Assembly: GCA_965637545.1 (NCBI GenBank)
Contig: OZ281496.1
Location: 29,016,001-29,080,000, forward strand
Length of the DNA: 64,000 nt
Direction: 5' to 3'
From: Phallusia mammillata
Taxonomy: Eukaryota
Positions 17,368-36,954 of the stretch are shown here, piece after piece. Below the pieces are notes generated by a model, which was not told the origin of the DNA, searched no databases, and saw only the letters and a list, made by a program, of their open reading frames with translations. Position 1 is the first letter of the stretch; each line of letters begins with the position of its first letter. The translations under genes and the position numbers were made by a program.

Positions 17368-18209
17368 TCATAGGTTGAGGTTGGACACAAGCATTATGAA
17401 CATATCCTCTTCTCCACGAATCAGAACGTCAGAATCTGGGATCTCCTCCACTTTCCAAGGAGCTTTTACTTCGCTACGAAATCTCCCACTCAAATCAAAT
17501 GGCTTCAGTAGTTCTTCAGTAACCTCAACACCAAGCTTCTCAAACTCCTTGGTTTTTTGAATCAGCAAGTTTTGCACACTGTCGATGGACTTTAAATGAT
17601 CGACAACTTCTTCTAGTCCACTAGAAATGCAATGTCAAACCTTCATTGTATTCTTTTATTTGACGCAATTGCCTCATAGATATCTTTGTACTTGCTAAAA
17701 AAATGGTTGTATGTAACTACATCGCAAATGCCTTCCAATACACATTTCATAAACAATTCAGGAGCAAGCTTTCCCACTTCATATTCATTTCCACCCGGCA
17801 ACTTCAGTGGTTCAATAACTTGAGGAAAACTAAAACTCATCAGCGCCAAACAGCCGTCGTGTTTTAAAACCCGTCGAGCTTCTTGAAGAAATTTGGGCAG
17901 ATCAAACCAATGTCCCGATTCAGCGTTTGTAATTAAGTCAGCGCTATTATTATGCTGCCCTTGCTTCAGCATTTCAGCACTCACATCAATCCCATCAACT
18001 CGTTTGAAGAACGGCGCAAAAAGTGTAGTTGCTTGGCCCGTACCACAGGCAATATCTATGAGTTGATCAAACACGACTGGTGTTTCTTCAGCTATTCCAC
18101 GTTTTCGTTTCAAGTAATTTACCACGACATTTGCCACTTCTTTAGAATACGTCGGTCTGTATTTTACGTAGAAATCAGCAATGGTTTGAGATTCGTAAAA
18201 ACGCAGCAT
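17368..18209 (-). pseudogene. SAM methyltransferase copy M1, disrupted
   Basis: Starts MLRFYE and has DIACGTGQAT. An in-frame deletion of about 19 codons (VFSHVTYKEGAAEKIPASD) gives KQGQHNNSADL. An indel near 17630-17645 splits the C-terminus into ORF 17368-17577. Confidence 0.85.
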
Positions 18210-18867
18210 TTCGAATTGCTCTTGTTGTTTGTACTCAGCCTTTATTATTGAGTAAGCAAATGCACTGAGCGATAAAACAGCTGTCGCTTTGTTTTGATAA
18301 TGTGTTGCGGAAATATACAAAAATTACGTCCTGTTTTGTTCCTCGAAACATTTAGTCAGGATGATAATAGAACGCATAGCCTGATAGATCAAATGCATTG
18401 AATTGATCCAATCATTGCAATAAAATTTAAACTTTGCGCAAACACAAACAATTTAAATGTACAATTTGGAAACAAAGCAACATTAAGCAAGATGCGACAA
18501 GAATTTTGTGAAACTGTGTCAGTGATCAAGTATGGCCGGTTAATCAAGAAAAGACACAAATTGGACAACAAAAGCCCACGCTAAACATCCTCGTCTGGAT
18601 TCTAAAAATAATAGCCTTCCACGTCCAATATTTTAGGCTGTGTGCAATCACGACATGCATTCTATTTCACTTATGAACTTTACGGCCACATCCGGGATAT
18701 CTTTAACATTCCACTCAATTTAACTTCACTTTAAAATATTTTACAACGGTCAACAGACGGGACAAAAAGTAGGCCAAGATAATGCAAACAGGCCTCTTAA
18801 TATTATTTGTGGAAAATCGCAAGACATTATAATTGTTAAGCGCCTAAATGCTAAAGTATATAGGATA

Positions 18868-19773
18868 TCATTCGTTGAAGTTGGACATAAGTATTATGAA
18901 CATTTCATGCTCTCCATGGATCAGAACCTCAGATTCGGGAATGTCCTCGACCTTCCAAGCAGCTTTTACTTCGCCACGAAATCTCTCACCCAGATCATAT
19001 GGTTTCAGTAGTTCTTCAGTAACCTCAACACCAAGCTCCTCAAACTCCTTGGTTTTTTGAATCAGCAAGTTTTGCACACTTTCGACGGACTTTATATGAC
19101 CGACTACTTCCTCAAGTGTCCACTGGAAATGCAATGTCAAATCGTCGTTGTATTCTTTTGTGTTCGACGGAATTGCCTTGAAGATGTCTTTGTACTTGTT
19201 GAAAACATGATTGTATGCAACAACATCGTACTTGCCTTCCAATAAACATTTTATGAACAGATCACTGGCAAATTTTCCCATTTCATATTCATTTCCACCC
19301 GGCAACTTCAGTGGTTCAATAACTTTAGGAAAACTCGAACCCATTATCGCCAAACAGCCGTCGTGTTTTAAAACCCTTCTTGCTTCGTGAAGAAATTTGG
19401 GCAGATCAAACCAATGGACCGATTCAGCGCTTGTCACCAAGTCAGCGCTATGATCAGAAGCTGGTATCTTTTCTGCAGCACCCTCTTTGTAAGTTACGTG
19501 ACTGAAGACGTTCTGTTGCTGCGCTTGCTTTAGCATTTCAGTACTGATATCGACCCCATCAACTCGTTTAAAGAACGGCGCAAACAGTGCAGTTGCTTGA
19601 CCCGTACCACAGGCAATGTCTATGAGTTGATCAAACACCACTGGCGTTTCTTCAGCTATTCCACGTTTTCGTTTCAAGTAATTAACCACGACATTTGCCA
19701 CTTCTTTAGAATACGTCGGTCTATATTTTACGTAGAAATCAGCAATGGTTTGAGATTCGTAAAAACGCAGCAT
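18868..19773 (-). CDS. Class I SAM-dependent methyltransferase (Methyltransf_11-type, Tmt1/Crg1-like small-molecule family), copy M2, 301 aa
   Basis: 906-nt intron-free ORF from the conserved ATG. Motifs: YRPTY, motif I LIDIACGTGQAT, VDISTEM, GAAE, AESVHWFD, EARRVLKHDGCLA. Confidence 0.9.
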   Translation of the reverse strand: MLRFYESQTIADFYVKYRPTYSKEVANVVVNYLKRKRGIAEETPVVFDQLIDIACGTGQATALFAPFFKRVDGVDISTEMLKQAQQQNVFSHVTYKEGAAEKIPASDHSADLVTSAESVHWFDLPKFLHEARRVLKHDGCLAIMGSSFPKVIEPLKLPGGNEYEMGKFASDLFIKCLLEGKYDVVAYNHVFNKYKDIFKAIPSNTKEYNDDLTLHFQWTLEEVVGHIKSVESVQNLLIQKTKEFEELGVEVTEELLKPYDLGERFRGEVKAAWKVEDIPESEVLIHGEHEMFIILMSNFNE

Positions 19774-20628
19774 TTTGAATTGCTCTTGTTGTTTGTACTC
19801 AGCCTCTGTAGTTAAATAAGCAAATGCACTGAGCGATAAAACAGCTGTCGCTTTGTTTTGATAACTTGATGCGGAAATTATGACATGTTTTGTAATTCGA
19901 AACAATTAGGAATATTCAAAGAGCTGTCAAATCAAATGAATACATTGAATTTAACAAACAGTGCAGAAGAATTTTAAACTCTGCGCCAAAACAAACATTA
20001 AGTGTCGCATTCTGACTTGCTGTAACAGCCTTCAGAGTTACACAAATAAAATGCACTCACCGAAAAGAGCTGTCGCTTTGTTTTGATAATCTGCTGCGGA
20101 AATATTCTAAAACTACGAACATTTTTGCTCTTCTAAACATATGCGCAGCCTGATATAAATAAATGCATTGTATTGAACAATCAGTACCGTCATATGTTAA
20201 ACACCAACATATTATGGGCTTATTTTGGAAACTAAGCATCAGCAACATTAACCAGAGTACGAAAAAATAGTGCAAAACTGGGGAGGTGGTAAAGTAAAGA
20301 TGGTTGATCAAGTAACGACTCAAATTGGACAACAAAAACCCAAGTAAACCTTCTTCATATGGGTTCTGATGATAATATCCTTTAACGGCCAACATTTTAG
20401 GCTGTGTGCAAACATGACTTTCTTTCTATTTTACATTTGGCTTTCCTCCTCATCCGAGACATCTTAAATATACAAAGCGGATTTAATTTGGCTTCAAATA
20501 TTTCTACTAAGGTCAACAGACTTGACGAGTGTAGGGCAAAAACATGTACACAGGCCTAATAGTATTGTTTGTGAAAAGTCGCAAGACATCAAATTGTTAA
20601 GCACCACAATGCTAAAGTAAATAGGATA

Positions 20629-21534
20629 TCATTGGTTGAAGTTGGACACAAGTATTATGAACGTTTCGTGCTCTACTCGTATCAAAACCTCAGATTCAGG
20701 GATGTCCTCGACGTTCCAAGCAGCTTTTACTTCGCTACGAAATCTCTCACTCAAATCAAATGGCTTCAGTAGTTCTTCAGTAATCTCAACACCAAGCTCC
20801 TTAAACTCCCTGGCTTTTTGCATTAGCAAGTTTTGCACACTTTCGACGGACTTAATATAACCGACTACTTCCTCAAGTGTCCACTGGAAATGCAATGTCA
20901 AATCGTCATAGTATTCTTTAGCATTTGATGGAATTGCCTCATAGATATCTTTGTATTTGTTTAGACAATTGTTGTATGCAACATCATCGTAAATGCCTCC
21001 CAATACACATTTCATGAATAGATCACTGGCAAATTGTCCCATTTCATATTCATTTCCATCGGGCAACTTCAGTGGTTCAACAACTTGAGGAAAAGTCATA
21101 CCCATTATCGCCAAACAGCCGTCGTGTTTTAAAACCCTTCTCGCTTCTTCAAGAAAAATTGGCACATCAAACCAATGGACCGATTCAGCGCTTGTAATTA
21201 AGTCAGCGCTATGGTCAGAAGCTGGCATCTTTTCTGCAGCACCCTCTTTGTAAATTACGTGACTAAAAGCGTTATGGTGCTGCGCTTGCTTTAGCATTTC
21301 AGGACTTACATCAATTCCATCAACTCGTTGAAAGAACGGCGCAAAAAGTGAAGTTGCTTGACCCGTACCACAGGCAATGTCTATGAGTTGATCAAACACG
21401 ACTGGTGTTTCTTCAGATATTCCACGTTTTCGTTTCAAGTAATTAACCACGACATTTGCCACTTCTTGAGAAAACGTCGGTCTATATTTTACGTAGAAAT
21501 CAGCAATGGTTTTAGTTTCGTAAAAACGCAACAT
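20629..21534 (-). CDS. SAM methyltransferase copy M3, 301 aa
   Basis: 906-nt intact ORF with the same motifs; variant segments MGMTFP and YDDVAYNNCLN. Confidence 0.9.
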   Translation of the reverse strand: MLRFYETKTIADFYVKYRPTFSQEVANVVVNYLKRKRGISEETPVVFDQLIDIACGTGQATSLFAPFFQRVDGIDVSPEMLKQAQHHNAFSHVIYKEGAAEKMPASDHSADLITSAESVHWFDVPIFLEEARRVLKHDGCLAIMGMTFPQVVEPLKLPDGNEYEMGQFASDLFMKCVLGGIYDDVAYNNCLNKYKDIYEAIPSNAKEYYDDLTLHFQWTLEEVVGYIKSVESVQNLLMQKAREFKELGVEITEELLKPFDLSERFRSEVKAAWNVEDIPESEVLIRVEHETFIILVSNFNQ

Positions 21535-21855
21535 TCTGACTTGCTTCAACAGCCTTCAGAGTTACACAAATAAAATGCACTGTCTGAAAACAGCTGTCGC
21601 TTTGTTTAGATAATGTATTGCGGAAATGTTTTAAAACTATGGATTTTTTTTCTTCTTCGAAACATTTAGGATGACAATAGAACACGCAGCCTGATAATAT
21701 GATAAAAACAACGACTTATTATGGGTGCATTTTTGAAACAAAGCAACAGCAACATTAACCAGTGTGCGACAGGCAAAGAGTGAAACTGGGGCGGTGGTAT
21801 AAAGTAATGCTGGTTAATCAAGAAACAACAGAATCGGATAACAAAAACCCAAATA

Positions 21856-21945
21856 AAACTTCTTCATCTGGGTTCTGATTATAATATCCTTCAGCGTGTT
21901 TGGACGTTGAAGGATGTTATAATCAGAATCCAGATGAAGAAGTTT
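21856..21945. repeat. Fold-back (inverted) junction at the centre of the methyltransferase array
   Basis: AAACTTCTTCATCTGGGTTCTGATTATAATATCCTTCAGCGT (ends 21897) is the near-perfect reverse complement of ACGTTGAAGGATGTTATAATCAGAATCCAGATGAAGAAGTTT (starts 21904), with a 6-nt spacer GTTTGG. Genes on the left are on the minus strand and genes on the right are on the plus strand. Confidence 0.9.
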
Positions 21946-22201
21946 AGCGTGGGCATTTGTTGTCCGATTTGAGTCTTTCCTTCATTAACCAGTTTTCCTT
22001 TCCCTTCGCCCCAATTTCCCAATATTTTTGTCGCACTTTGGTTAATGTTGCTTTGTTTGCAAAATGAACCTATATAATATTTGTTCTTGCGCAGAGTTTC
22101 AATTTCTTTGCAGTGATTGTTAAATTCAATCTATTCATTTGATTTGACTGCTCTTTCAATAAACGTAAATGTTATTAATTTCAAAACATGTCATAATTTC
22201 C

Positions 22202-22351
22202 GAAGAACTACTGAAACCATTTGATCTGAGTGAGAGATTTCGTAGCGAAGTAAAAGCTGCTTGGAAGGTCGAGGAGATCCCCGATATAGAGGTTGTGATC
22301 CGTGGAGAGCATAAAACGTTGACAATACTTGTGTCCAACTTCAACGAATGA
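22202..22351 (+). pseudogene. Methyltransferase copy M4: C-terminal fragment fused directly to an upstream region
   Basis: The upstream-unit sequence ending CATGTCATAATTTCC joins directly to EELLKPFDLSERFRSEVKAAWKVEE...SNFNE*; the first ~250 codons are deleted. Confidence 0.85.
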
Positions 22352-23009
22352 TATCCTATATACTTTAGCATTTAGGCGCTTAACAATTTTAATGTCTTGC
22401 GATTTTCCACAAATAATATTAAGAGGCCTGTTTGCATTATCTTGGCCTACTTTTTGTCCCGTCTGTTGACCGTTGTAAAATATTTTAAAGTGAAGTTAAA
22501 TTGAGTGGAATGTTAAAGATATCCCGGATGTGGCCGTAAAGTTCATAAGTGAAATAGAATGCATGTCGTGATTGCACACAGCCTAAAATATTGGACGTGG
22601 AAGGCTATTATTTTTAGAATCCAGACGAGGATGTTTAGCGTGGGCTTTTGTTGTCCAATTTGTGTCTTTTCTTGATTAACCGGCCATACTTGATCACTGA
22701 CACAGTTTCACACAATTCTTGTCGCATCTTGCTTAATGTTGCTTTGTTTCCAAATTGTACATTTAAATTGTTTGTGTTTGCACAAAGTTTAAATTTTATT
22801 GCAGTGATTGGATAAATTCAATGCATTTGATCTATCAGGCTATGCGTTCTATTATCATCCTGACTAAATGTTTCGAGGAACAAAACAGGACGTAATTTTT
22901 GTATATTTCCGCAACACATTATCAAAACAAAGCGACAGCTGTTTTATCGCTCAGTGCATTTGCTTACTCAATAATAAAGGCTGAGTACAAACAACAAGAG
23001 CAATTCGAA

Positions 23010-23915
23010 ATGCTGCGTTTTTACGAATCTCAAACCATTGCTGATTTCTACGTAAAATACAGACCGACGTATTCTAAAGAAGTGGCAAATGTCGTGGTAA
23101 ATTACTTGAAACGAAAACGTGGAATAGCTGAAGAAACACAAGTCGTGTTTGATCAACTCATAGACGTTGCCTGTGGTGCGGGTCAAGCAACCTCACTTTT
23201 TGCGCCGTTCTTTCAACGAGTTGATGGGATTGATGTGAGTCCTGAAATGCTGAAGCAAGCGCAGCAACAGAACGTCTTCAGTCACGTAATTTACAAAGAG
23301 GGTGCTGCAGAAAAGATACCAGCTTCTGATCATAGCGCTGACTTGGTGACAAGCGCCGAATCGGTTCATTGGTTTGATCTGCCCAAATTTCTTCAAGAAG
23401 CAAGAAGGGTTTTGAAACACGACGGCTGTTTGGCGATAATGGGTTCGAGTTTTCCTCAAGTCATTGAACCATTGAAGTTACCGGGTGGAAATGAATATGA
23501 AATGGGAAAGCTTGCTACTAAACTGTTTACGAAATATGCACTGGAAGGCATTTACGATGTAGTTGCATACAACCATGTTTTCAACAAGTACAAAGATATC
23601 TTCAAGGCAATTCCGTCGAACACAAAAGAATACAACGACGATTTGACATTGCATTTCCAGTGGACACTTGAGGAAGTAGTCGGTTATTTGAAGTCCATCG
23701 ACAGTGTGCACAACGTGCTGATTCAAAAAGCCAAGGAGTTTGAGGAGCTTGGTGTTGAGGTTACTGAAGAACTACTGAAGCCATTTGATCTGAGTGAGAG
23801 ATTTCGTAGCGAAGTAAAAGCTGCTTGGAAGGTCGAGGAGATCCCCGATACAGAGGTTGTGATCCGTGGAGAGCATAAAATGTTCATAATACTTGTGTCC
23901 AACTTCAACGAATAA
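23010..23915 (+). CDS. SAM methyltransferase copy M5, 301 aa
   Basis: 906-nt intact ORF; motif I reads DVACGAGQAT. Confidence 0.9.
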   Translation: MLRFYESQTIADFYVKYRPTYSKEVANVVVNYLKRKRGIAEETQVVFDQLIDVACGAGQATSLFAPFFQRVDGIDVSPEMLKQAQQQNVFSHVIYKEGAAEKIPASDHSADLVTSAESVHWFDLPKFLQEARRVLKHDGCLAIMGSSFPQVIEPLKLPGGNEYEMGKLATKLFTKYALEGIYDVVAYNHVFNKYKDIFKAIPSNTKEYNDDLTLHFQWTLEEVVGYLKSIDSVHNVLIQKAKEFEELGVEVTEELLKPFDLSERFRSEVKAAWKVEEIPDTEVVIRGEHKMFIILVSNFNE

Positions 23916-24189
23916 TACCCGATATACTTTATTATTTAGGCGCGTAACAATTTTGAGGTCCTACTATTTCACTCAAATACTATTAATGTGCCCGTCCTGT
24001 ACACTATTTAGCCCTGAACTCCTTCTCAAATCTGTTGACCTCAGTAAAATATTTCAAAGCAAAGTTAAATTGAGTTGGAAATTGAAGGAATCGTGGATGT
24101 GAATGCTAATGTCCCTTAGTATATGTCTTGTTTGCACTCAGCCAGAAATATTGGACGTTGAAGGATATTATGTTATCAGAACCCAGAAG

Positions 24190-27100
24190 TGTAATGTATA
24201 TTGCGCCACCTTGTGACGCATTAAGTATATTGCCCCGCCTTGTGACGACCTTGCCACATGCCCATATAAAAGCGTGAGTTTCACCTTTACGGGCATTCGA
24301 AGTGTCTTGTAGCTGTGGGCTTGTTGTGTCGCTGTTTCATTCAATACATGGTGTCAGAAGTGCGTTCACGCCTCTAATTAAGATGGACAAATCAGCAGTT
24401 TCTCTACCCCCGGCAATGCAGTGGAATGGCAATATGGCCGAGAACTGGAAAAGGTTTATCCAGAGATTCAAGCTCTATCTGACGGCGATTGGTGGTGACA
24501 GCAAGTCCGACAAAAGTAAGTCTGCGTTGCTTCTTCATGTTATGGAAGGTGATGGCATTCAGATTTACAATTCTTTTAAGTTCGAAACTGGAAATGACAT
24601 GAAATTTGATGTCATAGTGAATGAATTTCAACTGTATTTCTGCCCAAAAAAGAACGTAACATTTGAACGTTATAAATTTAAAAACCGAAACCAACAGGAT
24701 GGTGAAAATATTGATCAATATGCCACCGAGCTAAAAAATCTTTCTGCACATTGTGAGTTTGAGAATCTTAGTGACTCATTAATCCGGGATAGAGTGGTTT
24801 GTGGAATTTCTGACGACAAGGTTCGTGAAGTTCTTTTAAAAGAAGTTGACCTGACTCTAGAAAAATGTCTTTCTATTTGTCGTTCAAATGAAGTAGTTAA
24901 ACTACAAGCTGATGTAATTAGGAGCCAAGAGAATAACGTGTGGGTTGTCAATAATCAACAATTAACCCCGGGGACAAGTCGTTTCAGGTCCAACAAAAGG
25001 AACCTGCGGTGCGAAGGATGTGCTTTAATTCACGCTTCAGGTGCATGTTCAGCCCGGGGGAAACCTTGTTTCCATTGTGGAAAACTTGGCCACTACTCAA
25101 GATGTTGTAGCAACCGAAGAGTCAATGAAGTGAAGGAAACTTCTTTTCACGTTAATACAGTGAGTACCGTTGTCACTTCAAAAGATTGGTTAGTTCCAAT
25201 GAGATTAAATGGAAAACAGTTTACCTGTAAAATTGACACTGGTGCCCAGGTGAACCTAATTTCGCCATCAGATGTTAAAGCTATTTCCAGTACACCTCGT
25301 ATCGAAAGTACCAATATTGTGCTAACTGCGTTTGCCAATCACAAGATACTTGTGTATGGTGTTTGCACTTTAAATGTCACATTCCGAAACCATGCGCACG
25401 TGATGAAGTTCTTTGTTGTCCAAGCTAAAACTCAACCACTTATCGGTCTTTTTGGTGCAGAGGCGTTAATGCTTATCAATCGTGTACATGCAGTGGAGTC
25501 TAAAGAGCAGTGTGGTAATCTTGTCCGCGAATACGAGGATATTTTTAATGGTCTCCGTTGTCTTCCAGATACATACTCAATAAGGTTGAACTCCAATGCC
25601 ACTCCAGTCATCCATCCGAGTCGAAAAGTTCCGTATCTGCTGAAACCAAAGTTAAAAGAAGAACTTCAGAGAATGAAAGGATTAGGTGTTATAACAGAAG
25701 TGACTGAACCAACCAGATGGGTAAACTCCTTAGTAATTGTGAACAAAAAGAACGGAAAACTTCGTGTTTGTCTTGAACCCCGTGACCTCAATAAATCAAT
25801 CATGCGTGAACATTACATGTTACCCACTCGGGAGGAATTAATGTCACAATTTAGTAATGCAAAGTTTTTTAGCAAGTTGGATGCTGTGAGTGGTTTTTGG
25901 CAAATAAAAAATTGACGAAGAAAGTTCGAAGCTGTGTACATTTAATACTCCCTTCGGAAGGTACAGGTTTTTGCGTTTACCGTTTGGTATCTCGTCCGCC
26001 CCAGAAGTATTTCATCGTGCTGTACATTCCTTGTTTGAGCACATGGATGGTGTTGACACGTCAATGGACGATATTATTGTGTGGGGCAGTTCCAAAGAAG
26101 AACATGACAGGCGACTCCACATGGTTTTGAAACAAGCTAGGAAGTCAAATTTACGATTGAATCGTGAAAAATGCGTTTTTTGTGTCAATCGTTTAACGTT
26201 CATGGGAGATGTTTTAAGTGCAGGTGGTTTGCAACCAGATCCAAAGAAGGTTCGAGCCATTGAGACGATGTCTCGACCAGCAAACAAGCGTGATGTTCAA
26301 CGCTTTCTGGGCATGGTGAACTATCTTGCACGGTATATGCCCGATGTGTCAGAAAAAACTGCACAACTTCGCTCACTGGTGCATAAAGATAGTGAATGGA
26401 ACTGGACCAGTAACGAAGAAAAAGCGTGGATGGAATTAAAGAGGGTAATTTCTAGCCAACCCATTCTTAAACATTTTAATCCTGTACTTCCAATAAAGGT
26501 ATCCGCAGACGCCTCAAAAGAAGCTCTTGGTGCGGTATTGCTTCAGATGCATGACAAAGAGTGGTATCCTGTGTCCTACGCCTCTAGAGCAATGATTGAT
26601 ACTGAAACGCGCTACGCACAAATTGAAAAGGAACTCCTTGCGGTAACATTTGCGTGTGAGCGGTTTCATCAGTTCATATATGGTCAACACATATGCATAG
26701 AAACTGATCACAAGCCATTAGTTCCGTTGTTTAAAAAAAAACTTAAACAATTGTCCAATAAGGGTACAACGTCTGATGATACGTCTGCATTCGTATGACT
26801 TTAGTGTAATCTATACTCCAGGAAAGTTCATGCACACAGCCGATGCTTTGTCGAGAAATGTTTCCCAAGAAACCGAAGATTTGCAATCACATGCTGATGT
26901 GGAACGTTATGTTCATTTGGTTGTGTCATCACTTCCAATCTCCTCCAATGCTATGGCGCAACTTCGTGAAGAAACTGAACGAGATCCCCAGTCAATAGAC
27001 ATCGTGCATTACGTTTACAATGGTTGGCCGGAACGTTCCGCAAATTGCACACCAGACTCCCAGGTATTTTGGAAAGTCCGTGATGAACTGTCCGTAAATG

Positions 27101-28440
27101 AAGGTGTCCTGTTTAAAGGAAGCAAAATAGTCATTCCCCGGAAAATGAGACGGTCAATTCTAGCTAAGCTGCATGAAGGTCATATGGGGGAAGTTAAATG
27201 CAAAGGTCGTGCCCACGAATTAGTGTATTGGCCTGGAATTAACAAGGACATATCAAATTTGGTGTCCGCATGTTCAACATGTATGCGTTACAGACCGCGT
27301 TTGCAAAAAGAACCCTTGAATCCACATGAAATTACCAAGTTTCCCTTTGAAAAAATAGGTGTTGATTTATGTTCGTATAATGGTCGGTCGTATTTAGTAG
27401 TTGTTGATTATTATTCAGGTTATCCCGATGTTTATTGTATTAACAACACTTCTAGCGATGCAGTTATTACCTGTCTTAAGCAAACGTTTTCTCGCTTTGG
27501 TGTGCCGCTTAAACTATTTAGCGACAACGGGCCACAATTTTCCTCCCGTGAATTTAGATGTTTTTCGCAATCTTGGGACTTCTGTCATTTAACATCAAGT
27601 CCCCATTTTCCGCAATCTAATGGACTTGCGGAAAGGACGGTACAAACCGTTAAAAATCTGTTAAAAAAATCTGTTGCCAGTGGCCAGGACTTTGATTTGA
27701 ATTTGTTAATTTATCGTAGTTCGCCTTTACAGTGTGGTTTATCGCCGTCACAGTTGCTCATGGGAAGGCAAACCAGAAGTAATTTGCCTATTTGTGAAGA
27801 AAAGCTTAAGTGTCATAATTTGCCCAAATGCCCTTTTTATGCCGAAAAAACAGTACAAAAACGTTATTTTGATGTAGGTTCAAAACCATTAAATGTTTTA
27901 AAGCCTGGTACCCCTGTAAAACTGTTTGATTTTCTTCGCCGCACATGGACAGAGGACGGAGTTATTGACAAGGTTTTGTCACCGCGCTCCTATATCGTTC
28001 GTACTCCTGACAATGTACTTTATCGTCGTAATCGTATACATATTCGCCGCAACATTGAATCCTCATCTCAAAGGTCTTCTCTGTTGCAAACGTTACCTTT
28101 ATCGCCGCATCATGTTTCTGATAATTGTGAAATTGTTCGCAACTTTAATGTTCCGTGTCGTTCCAAAAGAAAACGTAAACCGACGAGACGACTAATTGAA
28201 GAAATGTAGACTTGTGTATTTTTCGTTTTCATACTGATGTTAGTTTTCTCCTTTTGTTTCTTCTTTTTCGTGAAGGGAAGATGTAATGTATATTGCGCCA
28301 CCTTGTGACGCATTAAGTATATTGCCCCGCCTTGTGACGACCTTGCCGCATGCCCATATAAAAGCGTGAGTTTCACCTTTACGGGCATTCGAAGTGTCTT
28401 GTAGCTGTGGGCTTGTTGTGTCGCTGTTTCATTCAATACA
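24190..28440 (+). mobile_element. Full-length Ty3/gypsy LTR retrotransposon (Mag-like)
   Basis: 159-bp TG...CA LTRs at 24190-24348 and 28282-28440, differing at one base (A24256 vs G28348). 5-bp TSD AGAAG (24185-24189, 28441-28445). PBS TGGTGTCAGAAGTG (24349-24362) is complementary to the 3' end of tRNA-Leu(CAA) type tRNAs. PPT GAAGGGAAGA (28272-28281). Confidence 0.97.
24383..28209 (+). CDS. Gag-Pol polyprotein of the LTR element, split by two +1 frameshifts
   Basis: Gag with two Cys/His knuckles (CEGCALIHASGAC, CFHCGKLGHYSRC), protease DTGA, RT (LDAVSGFWQI, RLPFG, SMDD), RNase H (ADAS, EKELLA, TDHKPL) and integrase (HHCC; DLCS, SDNG, NGLAER). Removing one A from the A6 run (~25906-25911) and one from the A9 run (~26733-26741) joins the three ORFs. 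Confidence 0.9.
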
Positions 28441-28808
28441 AGAAGAGGATGTTTAGCTTGGGCTTTTGTTTTCCGATTTGTGCATTTTCTTGATCAACAA
28501 GCTTTACTTTTCTATCGCCCCAGTTTCACACTTTCTTTGTCGCACTTTGATTAATGTTGCTTTGTTTTTCAAATAAAGCTATAATGTTTGTGTTTGCGCA
28601 GGGTTAAAATTTCTTTGCAGTGATTGTTAAATTCAGTGCATTCATTTGATTTGACTGTTTTTTTGCATCATCCTAAATGCTTTGAATTACAAATCATGTC
28701 ATAATTTCCGCATCAAGTTATCAAAACAAAGCGACAGATGTTTTATCGCTCAGTGCATTTGCTTACTGAATAATAAAGGCTGAGTACAAACAACAAGAGC
28801 AATTCGAA

Positions 28809-29718
28809 ATGCTGCGTTTTTACGAAACTAAAACCATTGCTGATTTCTACGTAAAATATAGACCGACGTATTCTAAAGAAGTGGCAAATGTCGTGGTAAA
28901 TTACTTGAAACGAAAACGTGGAATAGCTGAAGAAACACCAGTCGTGTTTGATCAACTCATAGACATTGCCTGTGGTACGGGTCAAGCAACTGCACTTTTT
29001 GCGCCGTTCTTTAAACGAGTTGTTGGGGTCGATATCAGTACTGAAATGCTAAAGCAAGCGCAGCAACACAACGTCTTCAGTCCCGTAACTTACAATGAGG
29101 GTGCAGCAGAAAAGGTACCATGCAGCTTCTGATAATAGCGCTGACTTGATTACGTGTGCCGATGCGGTCCATTGGTTTGATGTGCCCAAATTTCTTCAGG
29201 AAGCGAGAAGGGTTTTAAAACACGACGGCTGTTTGGCGCTGATCAGTTTTAGTTTTCCTCAAGTTATTGAACCACTGAAGTTGCCGGGTGGAAATGAACA
29301 TGAAATGGGAAAGCTTGCTACTACACTGTTTATGAAACATGTATTGGGAGGCATTTACGATGTAGTTGCATACAACCATGTTCTAAACAAGTACAAAGAT
29401 ATGTGCAGGGCAATTCCTTTAAAAACAAAAGAATACAATGACGATTTGAAACTACATTTCCAGTGGACTCTTGAAGAAGTAGTTGGTCACTTGAAATCAC
29501 ACGACAGTGTGCAAAACTTGCTGATTCAAAAAGCCAAGGAGTTTAAGGAGCTTGGTGTTGAGATTACTGAAGAACTACTGAAGCCATTTGATTTGAGTGA
29601 GAGATTTCGTAGCGAAGTAAAAGCTGCTTGGAACGTCGACGAGATCCCTGATTCTGAGGTTCTGATCCGTGGAGAGCAGGAAATGTACATATTACTTGTG
29701 TCCAATCTCAACCAATAA
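28809..29718 (+). pseudogene. Methyltransferase copy M6, frameshifted
   Basis: 910 nt versus 906 in intact copies. A 4-nt insertion near 29120 (CCATGCAGC vs CCAGC) shifts the frame; both halves are otherwise open. Confidence 0.85.
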
Positions 29719-30525
29719 CATTCTGTATACTTTAGCATTTTGGCGCTTAACAATTTTGATGTCTTCTAATTTTCCACTAATAATATTAATATGCCTGTGT
29801 ACAGGTTTTTTTAAGGTTTGGGTGACTGCTAAGTAGTTTTAAGAGACCGCAAGTGTTTCATTTAAATACCAAAAAATAGCCATATTCCAAATTTTGGGAA
29901 ACCGCTGGAGAAATTTGGGGGAACATTTCGGTCCCCCAAAACACCTTAAAGAAAAACACTGCCTGTGTACACTTTTTAGGCCTAAACTCCTTCTCAAATC
30001 GGTTGACATGATCGAAATATTTTAAAGTAAAGTTAAACATGCTTGAAACGTTGAAGATGTCCCGTATGTGGACGTAACGGTTAAGTGTAAAATAAAATCT
30101 ATGTCCTTATTGCACACACCCTGAAATGGTGGACGTTGAAGGATGTTATAATCAGAATCCAGATGAAGAAGTTTAGCGTGGGCATTTGTTGTCCGATTTG
30201 AGTCTTTCCTTGATTAACCAGTTTTCCTTTACCACCGCCCCAGTTTCACAATATTTTTGTCGCACTTTGGTTAATGTTGCTTTGTTTGCAAAATGAACCT
30301 ATATAATATTTGTTCTTGCGCAGAGTTTAAATTTCTTTGCAGTGATTGTTAAATTCAATGTATTCATTTGAATTGACTGCTCTTTAAATAAACGTAACTG
30401 TTTTTAATTTCAAAACATGTCATAATTTCCGCAATAAATTATCAAAACAAAGCGACAGTTTTTTATCGCCCAGTGTATTTGCTTATTTAACTATAGAGGC
30501 TGAATAAAAACAAGGGCAATATAAA

Positions 30526-31423
30526 ATGGTGCGTTGATACGAATCTCAAACCAATGCAGATTTATATGTAAAATATAGACCGGCGTATTTGAAAGAAGTG
30601 GCAAATTACTTGAAACGAAAACGTGGAATAGCTGAAGAAACACCAGTCGTGTTTGATCAACTCATAGACATTGCCTGTGGTACGGGTCAAGCAATCTCAC
30701 TTTTTGCGCCGTTCTTTAAACGAGCTGTTGGGATTGATGTAAGTACTGAAATGCTAAAGCAAGCCAAGCAACACAACGTTTTTAGTCACGTAACTTACAA
30801 AGAGGGTGCAGCAGAAAAGATACCAGCTTCTGGTAATAGCGCTGACTTGATTACGTGCGGGGAAGCGGTGCATTGGTTTGATCTGCCCAAATTTCTTCAA
30901 GAAGCAAGAAGGGTTTTAAAACACGACGGCTGTTTGGCGATAATATGTTCAAGTTTTCCTCAAGTTATTGAACCACTGAAGTTGCCGGGTGGAAATTGAT
31001 ATGAAAGGCGAAAGCTTGCTACTGAACTGTTTATGAAATCTGCATTGGGAGGCATTTACGATGTAGTTGCATACAACCATGTTCTGAACAATTAAGTACA
31101 AATATATCTACAAGGCAATTCCGTCGAACACAAAAGAATGCAATGGCGATTTTAAACTGCAGTTACAGCGGATAATTGAGGAAGTAGTTGGTCAACTGAA
31201 ATCCTACGACAGTGTGCAAAACATGCTGATGCAAAAAAGCCAAGAATTTGAGGCGCTTGGTGTTGAGATTACTAAAGAACTACTGAAGCCATTTGATTTA
31301 AGTGAGAGATTTTGTAGCGAAGTAAAAGCTGCTTGGAACGTCGAGGACATTCCTGATTCTGAAGTACTGATCCCAGGAGAGCAGGAAATGTACATAATAC
31401 TTGTGTCCAACTTCAATCAATGA
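30526..31423 (+). pseudogene. Methyltransferase copy M7, multiply disrupted
   Basis: Starts ATG GTG CGT TGA, has a short deletion in the NVVVN segment, a stop at 30997-30999, and further stops or indels before the conserved C-terminus. Confidence 0.9.
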
Positions 31424-31939
31424 TATTCTGTATGTTTTAGCATTTAGTCGCTTAACAACTTTGAGGGCTTGCGATTTTCCACAAATAGTATTAATAAGCC
31501 TGTTTGCATTATCTTACCCTACTTTTTGTCAAGTCTGTTGACCGTAGTAAAATATTTTAAAGTAAAGTTAAATGGGGTTGAAAGTTAAAGTTATCCCGGA
31601 TGTGTCAAAAGGAAATATAAAGTTAGTCGTGTTTGCACATAGCCTGAAATGTTGGACGTTGAAGGATCAGAACGCAGATGAGGATGTTTAGCGTGGGCTT
31701 TTGTTGACCGATTAGTGTCTTCTCTTGATTAATATGCTTTACTTTACCACCGCCCCAGTTTCACCCTTTGCTTGTCGCACTTTGGTTAATCTTGATGTAG
31801 TTTGAAAAATGTTGTGATGTTAAAATACTTTCGTAACACGTCATCAAAACAAACCGACCGTTATTTTATCACTCAGCGCATTTTTTACGTAACCCTATAT
31901 GGGCTGTTTTTTGTGTACAAACAACAAGAGCAATTCGAA

Positions 31940-32845
31940 ATGCTGCGTTTTTACGAATCTGAAACCATTGCTGATTTCTACCTACAACATCGACCGACGT
32001 ATTCTCAAGAAGTGGCAAATGTTGTGGTAAATTACTTGAAACGAAAACGTGGAATAGCTGAAGAAACACCAGTCGTGTTTGATCAACTCATAGATATTGC
32101 CTGTGGTACGGGTCAAGCAACTGCACTTTTTGCGCCGTTCTTTCAACGAGCTGTTGGGATTGATGTGAGTGCTGAAATGCTAAAGCAAGCTCTGCAACAT
32201 AACGTCTTTAGTCACGTAACTTACAAAGATGGTGCAGCAGAAAAGATACCAGCTTCTGATCATAGCGCTGACTTAATTACAAGCGCCGAATCGGTTCATT
32301 GGTTTGATCTGCCAACATTTCTTCAAGAAGCAAGAAGGGTTTTGAAACACGACGGCTGTTTGGCGATAATGGGTTCGAGTTTTCCTCAAGTCATTGAACC
32401 ACTGAAGTTACCGGGTGGAAATGAATATGAAATGGGAAAGCTTGCTACTAAACTGTTTACGAAATATGCACTGGAAGGGATTTACGATGTAGTTGCATAC
32501 AATCATGTTCTAAACAAGTACAAAGATATCTACAAGGCAATTCCGTCGAACACAAAAGAATACAACGACGATTTGACACTGCATTTCCAGTGGACACTTA
32601 AGGAAGTAATTGGTAACTTGAAATCCTACGACAGTGTGCAAAACATGCTGATGCAAAAAGCCAAGGAGTTTGAGGAGCTTGGTGTTGAGGCTACTGAAGA
32701 ACTACTGAAGCCATTTGATCTGAGTGAGAGTTTTCGTAGCGAAGTAAAAGCTGCTTGGAAGGTCGAGGAGATCCCCGATACAGAGGTTGTGATCCGTGGA
32801 GAGCATAAAACGTTCATAATACTTGTGTCCAACTTCAACGAATAA
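31940..32845 (+). CDS. SAM methyltransferase copy M8, 301 aa
   Basis: 906-nt intact ORF; the N-terminal variant reads FYLQHRPTY. Confidence 0.9.
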   Translation: MLRFYESETIADFYLQHRPTYSQEVANVVVNYLKRKRGIAEETPVVFDQLIDIACGTGQATALFAPFFQRAVGIDVSAEMLKQALQHNVFSHVTYKDGAAEKIPASDHSADLITSAESVHWFDLPTFLQEARRVLKHDGCLAIMGSSFPQVIEPLKLPGGNEYEMGKLATKLFTKYALEGIYDVVAYNHVLNKYKDIYKAIPSNTKEYNDDLTLHFQWTLKEVIGNLKSYDSVQNMLMQKAKEFEELGVEATEELLKPFDLSESFRSEVKAAWKVEEIPDTEVVIRGEHKTFIILVSNFNE

Positions 32846-33452
32846 TACCCGATATACTTTGTCATTTAGGCGCGTAACAATTTTGACGTCCTGCTACTTC
32901 TCTCAAATACTATTAATGTGCCCGTCCTGTACACTATTTAGCCCTTAACTCCTTCTCAAAGCTGTTGACCTTATTGAAATGTTTCAAAGTGAACTTAAAT
33001 TGAGTTGAAAATTGAAGATATCCCGAATGTGGGTGCGAATGTAAATTAATATGTGTGTCTTGTTTGCACACAGCCTGAAATGTTGGGCGTTGAGGGATGT
33101 TTTAATCAGAACCCAGATGAAGAAGATTAACTAGGGTTTTTGTTATCCCATTTGTGAATTTTCTTGATTAACCAGCATTACTTTTCCACCGGTCCATTGT
33201 TGCTTTGTTTACAAAATGGACTTATAAAATGTTTGATTTTGCGCAGTGTTTAAATTTCTTTGCAGTGATTGTTAATTTCCGTGCATTCATTTGATGTGAC
33301 TGTTTTTTACATCATCCTAAATGTTTTGAATTACAAATCATGTCATAATTTCCGCAACAAATTATCAAAACAAACCGACAGATGTTCTATCGCTTAGTGT
33401 ATTTGCTTGTTCAATTATAAAGGTTAAGTACAAACATCAAGAGCAATTCGAA

Positions 33453-34352
33453 ATGCTGCGTTTTTACGAATCTAAAGCCATTGCTGATTTTTACGTAAAA
33501 TATAGACCGACGTTTTCTCAAGAAGTGGCAAAGGTCGTGGTTAATTACTTGAAACGAAAACGTGGAATAGCTGAAGAAACACAAGTCGTGTTTGATCAAC
33601 TCATAGACGTTGCCTGTGGTACGGGTCAAGCAACTGGACTGTTTGCGCCGTTCTTTCAACGAGCTGTTGGGATTGATGTGAGTGCTGAAATGCTAAAGCA
33701 AGCACAGCAACAGAACGTATTTAGTCACGTAATTTACAAAGAGGGTGTTGCAGAAACGATACCAGCTTCTGATCATAGCGCTGACTTAATTACAAGCGCC
33801 GAATCGGTCCATTGGTTTGATCTGCCCAAATTTTTTCAAGAAGCAAGAAGGGTTTTAAAACACGACGGCTGTTTGGCGATAATGGGTTCGAGTTTACCTC
33901 AGGTTATTGAACCACTGAAGTTGCCGGGTGGAAATGAATATGAAATGGGAAAATTTGCCAGTAATCTGTTCACAAAATGTTTATTGGAAGGTAATTACGA
34001 TGTTCTTGCATACAACCATGTTCTGAACAAGTACAAAGACATTTTCAAGGCAATTCCTTCAAATACAAAAGAATACAACGACGATTTGACACTGCGTTTC
34101 CAGTGAACACTTGAGGAAGTAGTCGGTAATTTGAAATACTACGACAGTGTGCAAAACTTGCTAATTCAAAAAGCCAAGGAATTTGAAGAGCTTGGTGTTG
34201 AGGTTACTGAAGAACTACTGTAGCCATATGATTTGAGTGAGAGATTTCGTAGCGAAGTAAAAGCTGCTTGGAAGGTTGAGGATATTCCTGAATCTGAGGT
34301 TCTGATCCGTGGAGAGCATGAAATGTTCATAATACTCGTGTCCAACCGATAG
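33453..34352 (+). pseudogene. Methyltransferase copy M9, two nonsense codons
   Basis: TGA at 34104-34106 (conserved W) and TAG at 34221-34223 (conserved K). The 900-nt frame ends VSNR*. Confidence 0.85.
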
Positions 34353-34554
34353 ATGTCACGTGCTTTAGAGTCATCATTTTGTCTGATCGGTTTTGCTAAG
34401 CATAAAGTAATAACAAATTTTAACTTTGCAAGTATGACTTTTCGTTCCCATCGAAAATCATAAGTTGTTTGCAACTTTGATCGGTGTTACTTTACGGTAC
34501 CATGTGTTTTTGTAAGTTAATTCGTTAACTACTAGAGGTGTATAATCAGTGTCG

Positions 34555-35000
34555 TTAACCATTCTCTCTTGCACGTTTAGCTGGTTCTTTGATGTCATCA
34601 TTAGAATTGCTGTCAGTAATTACTGACATTGCCTTTGGTACTTTAGGCCATCTCGCCCCAACTTGAATTGAGTAAAACTGATCCAAGGCATGTTGAATTG
34701 CTGCTCCTGTATTTACCAAACTACCCAACGAACTTTCTAATACAAGGTTTAACAACGGGGTCGTCGGTTCAATGCATGAAATTTTTTTATAAACAAGCCC
34801 TCCTAATTGATCATCATAAAATGGTTTTATTATTTTGTCGCTGACATTGTAAGCTGGAGTCTACTGTATAAAGCTAACAAAACTGAAGCCGTCAGAAACA
34901 TATGGAATATGTCGTTGTGGCTAAACTAATCAAAGTTATGAATTAAAACGCTGACGTTTTTTCTGTACATGTCTCCAGTTTCCCGTGTTTGCGCGGAAAG
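34555..35000 (-). pseudogene. Collapsed remnant of a LU-sushi-vWA paralog
   Basis: A vWA exon (NTGAAIQHALDQFYSIQ...ITDSNSNDDIKEPAKRARENG*) is homologous to exon 37795-37620. The segment 34800-35000 is homologous to 40280-40445 (LU exon 2 end KHGKLETCT plus intron 2). Confidence 0.8.
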
Positions 35001-35129
35001 CACATCGTATTGTTAGAACATTTCCGCAATTTGCCTAGAGCAAAGCGACAGCTGTTTTCTCGCTCTGTGCAGAGTCATGTGTAAGTTATAACACAAAAGG
35101 CTGAACACAAACAACAAGAGGAATTCAAG

Positions 35130-36029
35130 ATGCTGCGTTTTTACGAATCTAAAAAAATTGCTGATGTCTATGTAAAATATAGACCGACGTATTCTAAAGA
35201 AGTGGCAAATGTCGTGGTAAATTTCTTGAAACGAAATCGTGGAATAGCTGAAGAAACAGCAGTCGTGTTTGATCGACTCATAGATGTTGCCAGCGGTACG
35301 GGTCAAGCAACTGGACTGTTTGCGCCGTTCTTTAAACGAGCTGTTGGGATTGATGTGAGTGCTGAAATGCTAAAGCAAGCGCAGCAACAGAACGTATTTA
35401 GGCACGTAACTTACAAACAAGGTGCTGCAGAAAAGATACCAGCTTCTGATAATAGCGCTGACTTGATTACAAGCGCCGAATCGGGGCATTGGTTTGATCT
35501 GCCCAAATTTCTTCAAGAAGCAAGAAGGGTTTTGAAACACGACGGTTGTTTGGCGATAATTTGTTCAACTTTTCCTACGGTTATTGAACCACTGGAGCTG
35601 CCCGGTGGAAATGAATATGTAATGGGAAAATATGCCAGTGATCTGTTCACAAAATGTTTATTGGAAGGCAAGTACGATGTTGTTGCATACAATCATGTTT
35701 TCAACAAGTACAAAGATATCTACAAGGCAATTCCGTCGAACACAAAAGAATACAACGACGATTTGACACTGCATTTCCAGTGGACACTTGAGGAAGTAGT
35801 CGGTCATTTGAAGTCCGTCGACAGTGTGCACAACGTGCTGATTCAAAAAGCCAAGGAGTTTGAGGAGCTTGGTGTTGAGGTTACTGAAGAACTACTGAAG
35901 CCATTTGATCTGAGTGAGAGATTTCGTGGCGAAGTAAAAGCTGCTTGGAATGTCGAGGAAATCCCTGATTCTGAGGTTCTGATCCGAGGAGAGGCTGATA
36001 TGTTCATAATACTTGTGTCTAACCTATAG
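35130..36029 (+). CDS. SAM methyltransferase copy M10, 299 aa
   Basis: 900-nt intact ORF with variants DVASGTG, AESGHW and ICSTFP; ends VSNL*. Confidence 0.88.
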   Translation: MLRFYESKKIADVYVKYRPTYSKEVANVVVNFLKRNRGIAEETAVVFDRLIDVASGTGQATGLFAPFFKRAVGIDVSAEMLKQAQQQNVFRHVTYKQGAAEKIPASDNSADLITSAESGHWFDLPKFLQEARRVLKHDGCLAIICSTFPTVIEPLELPGGNEYVMGKYASDLFTKCLLEGKYDVVAYNHVFNKYKDIYKAIPSNTKEYNDDLTLHFQWTLEEVVGHLKSVDSVHNVLIQKAKEFEELGVEVTEELLKPFDLSERFRGEVKAAWNVEEIPDSEVLIRGEADMFIILVSNL

Positions 36030-36954
36030 CGGTAAAGTGCTTTTAAACCATCATTTTGACACATCAGTTTTGTTATTTTGCTCTTAAGCAAGAAATGAAA
36101 AATTTAACTTCGAAAGCATGACTTTTTGTTCCAACGATGTTGTTTGTGACATATGGCATTAATCGGAGTTACTTTACGGTAGCATGTTTTCTCATGAGTT
36201 ATTACTGAAAATCCATATTAAGTGTAAATCCATACTAGTTAATGTTCCTGGTATGTTGTTGTGTTTACATAGCCTAATCATAAGATTAAATGTTGCGTAA
36301 ACCGCTTATTACGAAAAATTTATTTGTTCAAATACTTTTCCAGCAGATATTTTTTTGTATCATATTTGTTAGATTTTGACTTAATTAATGCAAGTTAAAA
36401 AAGATTATGTTTCGCAATGATCGCAAAAAAACCAATGATTTATCGTTGATCTTCCTTTTTCGTTTCCCTGTTCAATTACCTTGAGAAAAATGAGACCTTG
36501 TGCGTGTTGTGTAACCAGAAGAAATAAACAGAATCGTTTGTGAATCATTGGGCTTTATGCAGCAAACTTCAAGAATTGTGATAATGAACTTACTCGCCAG
36601 TGAAGGCCACCGATATGAACCACTAGAAGCAGAAGAAACGAGTAGCTTTCAAGTAAGGAATAACATAGCGGTCACTCATAGGTTCTCTTTGCCAACGCAA
36701 TGTGTTGTGGTAGTGTTTAAAATAAGCTAAACATTGCCTGCGCCTACTTTTCTTTCCCATTCTCTTCCACTAAAATGTATTATAACAAACGGTTGTGCAT
36801 CAGCTTTTTATAGTTGTTTACAAAGTTGTGTTCTGTGACGCTCATGTAAAAGTATGTTTAGTTACAATGAAGGGATCAGACATCTTAAATAAACGTAACA
36901 CGTTGAGGTATTATGTTGGTTAAGTGAAAAAAAAATGATTCAAGAGAAAACAAA

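What the first reader, a model, noticed from the sequence alone, without database searches (positions are those of the whole stretch)
17368..36029. Ten-copy array of intron-free small-molecule methyltransferases that differ mainly in predicted substrate-pocket segments
Seen: ten copies (five intact, five broken) of a ~301-aa ORF without coding introns, among intron-rich neighbours. The SAM-binding motifs are nearly invariant. Substitutions cluster in four places: after strand 4 (AESVHW, ADAVHW, GEAVHW, AESGHW), after strand 5 (MGSSFP, MGMTFP, ISFSFP, ICSTFP), in a lid-like stretch (GKFASDLFIKCLLEGKYD, GQFASDLFMKCVLGGIYD, GKLATKLFTKYALEGIYD, GKLATTLFMKHVLGGIYD) and in the N-terminal helix. Known: the YRPxY / DxxCGTGQAT / HWFD / E..RVL signature fits the family of yeast Tmt1 (trans-aconitate) and Crg1 (cantharidin), which methylate small carboxylate-type compounds. 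Inference: this is a fast-turning-over enzyme repertoire for detoxifying or making small molecules, possibly an undescribed chemical-defence system.
Basis: partly seen in the sequence, partly recalled or inferred. Interest (0 to 1): 0.75.

Follow-up and report, generated by a model that had tools for sequence, protein, structure and literature searches.

The report
Tandem Tmt1/Crg1-like methyltransferase gene array
A sea-squirt (Phallusia mammillata) chromosome carries ten tandem copies, five intact and five broken, of an intronless small-molecule methyltransferase gene; they evolve by duplication, decay and copy-to-copy sequence exchange, with no detectable selection for new substrate pockets.

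Summary
The array is real: nine full-length copies plus one 3' fragment, five intact and five broken, at 17377-36029. An inverted junction near 21900 and a young LTR retrotransposon interrupt it. A paralog elsewhere in the genome is 100% identical to a Phallusia mammillata protein, so the host is that ascidian.

The family assignment holds. The Pfam hit is Methyltransf_11. Yeast Tmt1 (3g5t) is the best structural match and, with 4hg2, one of the two best PDB profile matches. Named relatives are the animal 'putative methyltransferase DDB_G0268948' / CRG1 / TMT1 group. About 56 mostly intronless loci exist in this genome. The window array is one young clade.

The central claim, that copies differ mainly in pocket segments, is not supported.
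- Of the 92 variable residues, 78% lie outside the four named segments.
- The SAM core is as variable as the average.
- dN/dS is 0.34-0.47 overall, and 0.24-0.75 (four together 0.49) across the named segments.
- M2a versus M1a on the intact copies gives p=0.88.
- Gene conversion is pervasive, and the 'lid' comes as two shuffled haplotypes.

M10, and weakly M8, appear transcribed. This is an ordinary birth-and-death expansion of a known family with unknown substrates. The same scan reported a different methyltransferase array elsewhere in this genome.

The parts
17377..18209 (-). M1, pseudogene copy at the array's left end
   Evidence: tblastn gives three HSPs in three frames. It has a 60-nt in-frame deletion of codons ~86-105, 2-nt deletions at codons ~204 and ~219, and a TAG at codon 217.
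18871..19773 (-). M2, intact 301-codon copy; used for the structure model
   Evidence: 85% identity to M10 over residues 1-299 in one frame. AlphaFold2 mean pLDDT is 94.4. All 26 family-conserved residues are kept.
20632..21534 (-). M3, intact 301-codon copy; the most divergent intact member
   Evidence: 78% identity to M10. Methyltransf_11 E=1.6e-21.
21832..21969 (.). Inverted junction where the three minus-strand copies meet the seven plus-strand copies head to head
   Evidence: Inverted repeat I3: 66-nt arms, 85% complementary, 6 nt apart. The 5' end of M3 is 92-95% complementary to the 5' ends of M5 and M6.
22196..22339 (+). M4, 3' fragment covering codons ~251-298 only
   Evidence: tblastn HSP covers query 251-298 at 77% identity. 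The upstream-region repeats D1 and D7 show the rest of the coding sequence was deleted.
23010..23912 (+). M5, intact 301-codon copy
   Evidence: 86% identity to M10. Motif I carries T57A.
24190..28440 (+). LTR retrotransposon inserted between M5 and M6; not part of the enzyme family
   Evidence: Direct repeats of 159 nt, 99% identical, at 24190-24348 and 28282-28440. Gag, aspartyl protease, RT, RNase H and integrase domains lie in three ORFs.
28809..29709 (+). M6, pseudogene with one frameshift
   Evidence: 4-nt insertion at 29119-29122 after codon 103. tblastn gives two HSPs in frames 3 and 1.
30526..31414 (+). M7, pseudogene
   Evidence: TGA at codons 4 and 162, a 12-nt deletion at codon 27, and a 4-nt insertion at 31090-31093. 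No RNA-run contigs lie on it.
31940..32842 (+). M8, intact 301-codon copy; weakly covered by putative RNA contigs
   Evidence: 83% identity to M10. X1 contigs lie at 31928-32309 and 32501-32882 at low depth.
33453..34346 (+). M9, pseudogene with in-frame stops
   Evidence: TGA at codon 218 (34104) and TAG at codon 257 (34221).
35130..36029 (+). M10, intact 299-codon copy; the best-supported transcribed member
   Evidence: Contigs from three putative RNA runs in two studies tile 35039-36085 with no mismatches. They are absent from the flanking intergenic DNA, which a DNA run does cover. Methyltransf_11 E=5.3e-23. Motif I carries C55S.

Best explanation
This is a young, lineage-specific tandem and inverted duplication array in the ascidian Phallusia mammillata. 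The gene is an intronless class I SAM-dependent methyltransferase of the Tmt1/Crg1 family, annotated in animals as 'DDB_G0268948-like'.

The array evolves by birth and death. Units of about 1.5-1.7 kb were duplicated. Half have decayed into pseudogenes. The copies repeatedly exchange segments by gene conversion, so each is a mosaic. The intact copies are under relaxed purifying selection: roughly half the codons are constrained and half nearly neutral.

The intact copies keep every family-conserved residue. At least M10 appears to be transcribed as an unspliced mRNA of about 1 kb.

By homology, the intact copies probably transfer the methyl group of SAM to a small metabolite or xenobiotic, most plausibly a carboxylate, forming a methyl ester as Tmt1 and Crg1 do. 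That last step is inference only. The extra amino-acid variation in the lid helix comes mainly from two old haplotypes shuffled among copies, not from repeated adaptive substitution.
For: Array anatomy.

Organism: paralog L015 is 100% identical to P. mammillata CAB3262782.1.

Family:
- Pfam Methyltransf_11.
- Profile against PDB: 4hg2 1e-24 and Tmt1 3g5t 1.8e-24 over positions 11-242.
- AlphaFold2 pLDDT 94.4, and Foldseek ranks 3g5t first at TM 0.73.
- Named homologs are DDB_G0268948 / CRG1 / TMT1 across Metazoa, the closest in the tunicates Clavelina and Ciona.

Lineage-specific expansion:
- About 56 loci on 8 chromosomes, most as single open frames.
- In the quick tree the window copies form a clade (support 100) sister to the copy at C7:8.69 Mb. 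All tunicate sequences fall together on one side of a branch with support 96.

Gene conversion:
- 48% of informative site pairs fail the four-gamete test, and a PHI-like permutation gives p<0.001.
- Segment trees disagree.

Selection:
- Pairwise dN/dS is 0.34-0.47 and dS 0.11-0.28.
- M1a fits with about 51% of codons at omega 0 and 49% at omega 1. M2a is no better, p=0.88 and p=1 when partitioned.
- In the lid, piS is doubled along with piN.

Conserved residues are kept. Transcription of M10. Tmt1 and Crg1 chemistry: PMC3197675.
Against: - No biochemical evidence for any animal member turned up in my searches, so the substrate class is inferred from about 18% identical yeast enzymes.
- The strict four segments are modestly enriched for variable residues (odds ratio 2.6). 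Post-beta5 shows the highest local ratio, 0.75. Some functional divergence therefore cannot be excluded.
- With all nine copies, M2a is favoured: p=0.002 on a single tree and p=0.019 partitioned. This rests on one site, codon 230.
- Five sequences give low power to detect site-specific selection.
- The RNA nature of runs X1, X2 and X5 is the tool's guess. It is supported only by their gene-limited coverage.
- Expression of M2, M3 and M5 was not examined.
Confidence: 0.67

Rival explanations
1. The array is a diversifying enzyme repertoire in which positive selection remodels the substrate pocket (post-beta4, post-beta5, lid, N-terminal helix), so that each copy handles a different small molecule as a chemical defence.
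For: - The variable segments sit at the topological positions that usually line the substrate site in class I methyltransferases (general knowledge).
- Variable residues are modestly enriched there (odds ratio 2.6).
- The lid region is also the most variable part of the whole family: entropy 2.89 against 1.5-1.6 in the core.
- Yeast Tmt1 and Crg1 have divergent substrates.
Against: - piN/piS in the segments is 0.24-0.75 and never exceeds 1. Synonymous diversity rises together with nonsynonymous diversity.
- M2a versus M1a on the intact copies gives p=0.88 and p=1.
- 78% of variable positions lie outside the segments, and the SAM core is equally variable.
- The lid variation is two haplotypes shuffled by conversion.
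- Half the copies are dead.
Confidence: 0.12
2. Dosage or redundancy. The intact copies are functionally equivalent. The array exists because extra copies raise enzyme output, or it is simply a neutral by-product of an unstable, recombination-prone locus.
For: - All conserved residues are kept.
- Conversion partly homogenises the copies.
- Half the codons are nearly neutral.
- Pseudogenisation is frequent.
- Only one copy is clearly expressed in the available runs.
Against: - The intact copies differ at 10-22% of residues, which is a lot for pure dosage copies.
- If dosage mattered, several copies should be expressed.
- The available runs sample few conditions.
Confidence: 0.15
3. The proteins are not small-molecule enzymes but methylate a protein or an RNA.
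For: Methyltransf_11 is a generic domain. Weak PDB sequence hits include an rRNA and a tRNA methyltransferase.
Against: The best profile and fold matches with an assigned function are small-molecule methyltransferases: Tmt1, HvrF and GtmA/TmtA. 4hg2 and TTHA0223, also near the top, are uncharacterised. The RNA enzymes score 15 or more orders of magnitude worse.
Confidence: 0.04
4. The intronless genes entered the tunicate genome by horizontal transfer from bacteria.
For: The genes are intronless among intron-rich neighbours. The first word search returned mostly bacterial proteins of about 249 aa.
Against: - Those bacterial hits are at most 30% identical and lack the C-terminal part.
- The profile search finds full-length relatives across deuterostomes and protostomes.
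- The tunicate sequences group together, apart from the other animals sampled; no bacterial sequences were in the tree.
Confidence: 0.02

Closest known systems
Yeast Tmt1 (trans-aconitate 3-methyltransferase, PDB 3g5t)
   Same: It is the best structural match (Foldseek E=4e-18, TM 0.73). Its profile match covers the N-terminal helix, the Rossmann core and part of the lid (1.8e-24, positions 11-242). It is a class I SAM enzyme that makes methyl esters of small carboxylates.
   Different: Only about 18% identical. Tmt1 is a single-copy fungal gene, not an array. The substrates of the tunicate proteins are unknown.
Yeast Crg1 (cantharidin resistance methyltransferase)
   Same: It is a close sequence homolog of Tmt1. 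It detoxifies a xenobiotic by methylation and is stress-induced (PMC3197675). Bird homologs of the window protein are annotated 'CRG1 methyltransferase'.
   Different: No direct comparison was run here. There is no evidence that the tunicate genes respond to toxins.
Animal 'putative methyltransferase DDB_G0268948' family (for example zebrafish zgc:162780; Clavelina and Ciona paralogs)
   Same: Homologs along most or all of the length, at roughly 28-38% identity where the alignment covers three quarters or more of the query, with E down to 1e-98 for named members. The window copies group with the other tunicate members of this family.
   Different: Most non-tunicate proteins listed are shorter, about 270 aa. 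Here there are about 56 loci, and this particular clade of ten is species-specific.
OvoM-like methyltransferase array in the same genome (earlier scan finding s1-355920)
   Same: Another tandem array of small methyltransferase genes in P. mammillata.
   Different: It is reported as a different family (OvoA-derived). It was not examined here.
Plant SABATH carboxyl methyltransferase families (analogy only)
   Same: Multi-copy, tandemly expanded small-molecule carboxyl methyltransferases.
   Different: A different fold subfamily, with no homology beyond class I. Recalled from general knowledge and from a title seen, not tested.

Membership tests
Tmt1/Crg1-like (animal DDB_G0268948-like) class I SAM methyltransferases | Class I Rossmann-type methyltransferase core, with a glycine-rich motif I and an acidic residue at the end of beta2 | tested here: met
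   Methyltransf_11 E=5e-23. G56, Q59 and D75 are invariant in the 50-sequence family alignment and present in all copies. The model has seven core strands in class I order.
Tmt1/Crg1-like (animal DDB_G0268948-like) class I SAM methyltransferases | Closest solved relative is Tmt1 over core plus accessory elements, not only the generic SAM core | tested here: met
   Profile hit to 3g5t at 1.8e-24 covers positions 11-242. Foldseek ranks it first with TM 0.73 in both directions.
Tmt1/Crg1-like (animal DDB_G0268948-like) class I SAM methyltransferases | N-terminal Y-x-x-x-R-P motif and H-W-F after beta4 | tested here: inconclusive
   Y14, R18, H120 and F122 are at least 90% conserved among 50 animal family members and kept in all window copies. 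I did not inspect the residue-level alignment to yeast Tmt1.
Tmt1/Crg1-like (animal DDB_G0268948-like) class I SAM methyltransferases | Nearest named homologs carry the family's names | tested here: met
   'Putative methyltransferase DDB_G0268948', 'CRG1 methyltransferase' and 'TMT1 methyltransferase'. These are automatic annotations, not tested functions.
Tmt1/Crg1-like (animal DDB_G0268948-like) class I SAM methyltransferases | Methyl-ester formation on small carboxylate substrates | not testable with these tools
   Needs an enzyme assay.
Diversifying (positively selected) enzyme repertoire | dN/dS above 1 at sites clustered in the substrate pocket | tested here: not met
   Segment piN/piS is 0.24-0.75. 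M2a versus M1a gives p=0.88 on the intact copies and p=1 partitioned. The only candidate site is codon 230, outside the named segments.
Diversifying (positively selected) enzyme repertoire | Rapid gene turnover (birth and death) | tested here: met
   Five of ten copies are broken. dS among copies is 0.11-0.28. The clade is species-specific.
Diversifying (positively selected) enzyme repertoire | Several members expressed | tested here: inconclusive
   M10 is clearly covered and M8 weakly in putative RNA runs. M7 and M9 are not covered. M2, M3 and M5 were not examined.

The most novel reading that the evidence does not exclude
The whole family may be an undescribed carboxyl-methylation ('phase II'-like) repertoire for dietary or environmental small molecules, or for endogenous specialised metabolites, in filter-feeding tunicates. 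It has about 56 mostly intronless loci in P. mammillata. Clavelina forms its own clade, as do unnamed ENA sequences that may come from other tunicates. The window array would be its youngest, still-diverging branch.
Probability: 0.25. Interest if true: 0.55.

Novelty: new member of a known kind. Interest (0 to 1): 0.3.

Why it matters
No animal member of the Tmt1/Crg1 ('DDB_G0268948-like') family turned up as biochemically characterised in my literature searches. A genome with about 56 copies, including a young array of five intact natural variants, is a convenient panel for finding the family's substrates in animals. As an evolutionary object it is an ordinary birth-and-death array with gene conversion. 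It also shows why apparent clustering of substitutions should be checked against synonymous diversity and recombination before selection is inferred.

Tried and rejected
The genomic context and species of the unnamed ENA homologs (P0001, P0024 and others) could not be examined.
- Horizontal transfer was considered because of intronlessness and the bacterial hits. It was rejected after the profile search and tree.
It was replaced by a version with fixed relative branch lengths and one scale per partition.
- The careful treekit search did not finish in 300 s, so the quick tree (SH-aLRT support only) was used.
- Three-dimensional mapping of variable residues relative to SAM was not possible, because model coordinates are not exposed to scripts. 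Only secondary-structure placement was used.
- Literature searches for the family in tunicates found nothing relevant.
- The codon models are my own Python implementation (GY94-type, F3x4), not PAML or HyPhy.
- The window has no N stretches.
- The LTR retrotransposon was only described.


Full report
**Observation**

ORF listing and tblastn with the 299-aa M10 protein show nine full-length copies and one 3' fragment of a gene of about 300 codons between 17377 and 36029.
- Three copies (M1-M3) lie on the minus strand and seven (M4-M10) on the plus strand.
- They diverge head to head from an inverted repeat at 21832-21897 / 21904-21969, with a 6-nt spacer.
- M2, M3, M5, M8 and M10 have uninterrupted frames.
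- M1, M4, M6, M7 and M9 are broken by deletions, frameshifts or stops.
- A 4.25-kb LTR retrotransposon with 99% identical 159-nt LTRs sits between M5 and M6.
- Neighbouring genes appear only as exon-sized ORFs matching parts of ADAM/disintegrin, Sushi and SLC6 profiles. The contrast 'intron-free among intron-rich neighbours' therefore holds.
- A DNA run covers the laid stretch (30400-36100, M7-M10) with long unique contigs at an even depth of about 92-100. This argues against a collapsed or mis-assembled array there.

**Organism**

The window is at C3:29.02-29.08 Mb of a 240-Mb genome. A paralog on C5 (L015) is 100% identical over 278 aa to Phallusia mammillata protein CAB3262782.1. The genome is therefore that ascidian or something extremely close. 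An earlier agent of this scan reached the same name on other DNA.

**Family**

- Pfam gives only the generic Methyltransf_11 domain.
- I aligned 50 sequences (A2): the five intact copies, 16 own-genome paralogs and 29 database homologs. As a profile against PDB, A2 hits 4hg2 (1e-24) and yeast Tmt1 3g5t (1.8e-24). The Tmt1 match extends over positions 11-242, well beyond the SAM core.
- The AlphaFold2 model of M2 is confident (pLDDT 94.4).
- Foldseek ranks Tmt1 first (TM 0.73). Next come 4hg2, HvrF, TTHA0223 and GtmA/TmtA. Those with an assigned function are small-molecule enzymes; 4hg2 and TTHA0223 are uncharacterised.
- The profile word search returns named full-length relatives across Metazoa. 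They are annotated 'putative methyltransferase DDB_G0268948', 'CRG1 methyltransferase' or 'TMT1 methyltransferase'. The closest are in the tunicates Clavelina lepadiformis and Ciona intestinalis.
- Tmt1 makes methyl esters of trans-aconitate and isopropylmalate, and Crg1 methylates cantharidin (PMC3197675).

Horizontal transfer is not needed to explain the genes.

**Size and shape of the family**

- The genome holds 65 matches, which merge into about 56 loci on eight chromosomes. Most are single uninterrupted frames. Other tandem arrays lie at C1 28.75-28.78 Mb (about 11 loci), C6 18.29-18.31 Mb (6) and C2 26.81 Mb (6), among others. Intronlessness is a trait of the whole family here, not of this array.
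- In a quick maximum-likelihood tree, the tunicate sequences fall together on one side of a branch with support 96. The P. mammillata paralogs group together (support 89). Clavelina forms its own clade.
- The five intact window copies form a clade with support 100, sister to a copy at C7:8.69 Mb with 49% identity.
- The 50%-clustered library of 1.8 billion proteins contains no relative above 42% identity.

**Are the differences concentrated in pocket segments?**

The quantitative claim fails.
- Among the intact copies 92 of 298 positions vary. Twenty of them lie in the 40 named codons (odds ratio 2.6, p=0.009, with segments chosen after seeing the data).
- AESVHW has a single variable position.
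- The SAM core varies as much as the rest, 29% against 31%.
- By structural region the variable fraction ranges only from 0.23 to 0.47, apart from beta6 at 0.08.

**Selection**

- Pairwise Nei-Gojobori dN/dS among intact copies is 0.34-0.47, with dS 0.11-0.28.
Synonymous diversity is also higher (0.222 against 0.161). The ratios are 0.49 against 0.42.
- The lid has a ratio of 0.50 and post-beta5 0.75. No window inside the segments exceeds 1.
- Codon site models that I implemented (GY94/F3x4) give, for the five intact copies, M1a with 51% of codons at omega 0 and 49% at omega 1. M2a does not improve the fit (LRT 0.25, p=0.88; LRT 0 with four segment-specific trees).
- Adding the four pseudogenes favours M2a: p=0.002 on a single tree and p=0.019 partitioned. 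This rests on one site, codon 230, in the loop between helices 220-228 and 231-246. That is outside all four named segments.

**Gene conversion**

- Of 89 informative biallelic sites, 48% of pairs fail the four-gamete test.
- Neighbouring sites are more compatible than shuffled ones (p<0.001).
- Trees from four segments disagree.
- In the lid (codons 167-184) there are two haplotypes: M2/M3/M9/M10 against M1/M5/M6/M7/M8. They differ at both synonymous and nonsynonymous sites. The lid 'cluster' is therefore largely one old block shuffled among copies, not many independent adaptive changes.

**Function and expression**

- All 26 family-conserved residues are kept in every intact copy, except C55S in M10. 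The intact copies therefore look catalytically competent.
- Contigs from three runs that the tool guesses to be RNA, from two studies, tile M10 from 35039 to 36085 without mismatch.
- Those runs cover M8 weakly. They are essentially absent from intergenic DNA and from M7 and M9, which the DNA run does cover.
- This pattern supports transcription of M10 as an unspliced mRNA of about 1 kb. M2, M3 and M5 could not be examined.

**Verdict**

This is a real but ordinary birth-and-death tandem array of a known small-molecule methyltransferase family in an ascidian. The copies are mosaic through gene conversion and evolve under relaxed purifying selection. The idea that the pocket is being diversified is not supported. 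The idea of a chemical-defence role is untested. The scale of the family in tunicates, and the lack of any characterised animal member in my searches, give it modest interest.

Noticed in passing
window 24190-28440: Young LTR retrotransposon with 159-nt LTRs 99% identical. Gag/protease, RT/RNase H and integrase lie in three separate ORFs, inserted between M5 and M6. Described only.
   Followed up: partly
window 21832-21969: Inverted repeat with 66-nt arms (85% complementary) and a 6-nt spacer at the head-to-head junction of the array. The 5' end of M3 is 92-95% complementary to the 5' ends of M5 and M6, which suggests conversion between inverted copies.
   Followed up: partly
window 45902-46249 and 61687-62034: Two 115-aa ORFs differing at one residue (P56S), both matching SLC6/SNF transporter profile positions 82-159. 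This suggests a recent segmental duplication with a spacing of about 15.8 kb.
   Followed up: no
window 52028-52077 and 54839-54912: A whole-window Rfam search at gathering thresholds found only a tRNA at 54839-54912 (-). The hammerhead ribozyme another reader noted at 52028-52077 did not reach any family's threshold in that search.
   Followed up: partly
window 3460-13310 (-): Exon-sized ORFs matching Disintegrin and Reprolysin profiles: a multi-exon ADAM-type metalloprotease gene upstream of the array.
   Followed up: no
window copies, codon 230 of the M2 frame (e.g. 35817-35819 in M10): The single codon with four to five different residues (V/I/H/Y) across copies. It is the only site with a high posterior for omega above 1 when the pseudogenes are included. 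It lies in a loop of the C-terminal helical insertion.
   Followed up: partly
G000 C1:28752940-28775949; C6:18286609-18305671; C2:26809371-26827560; C5:18020777-18028524: Other tandem arrays of the same intronless methyltransferase family in this genome, about 56 loci in all, several also containing pseudogenes.
   Followed up: partly
P0023 (Strigamia maritima T1J608, 3763 aa): A centipede 'SRCR domain-containing protein' contains three matches to this methyltransferase. It is probably an annotation that fuses tandem copies, or a real fusion.
   Followed up: no
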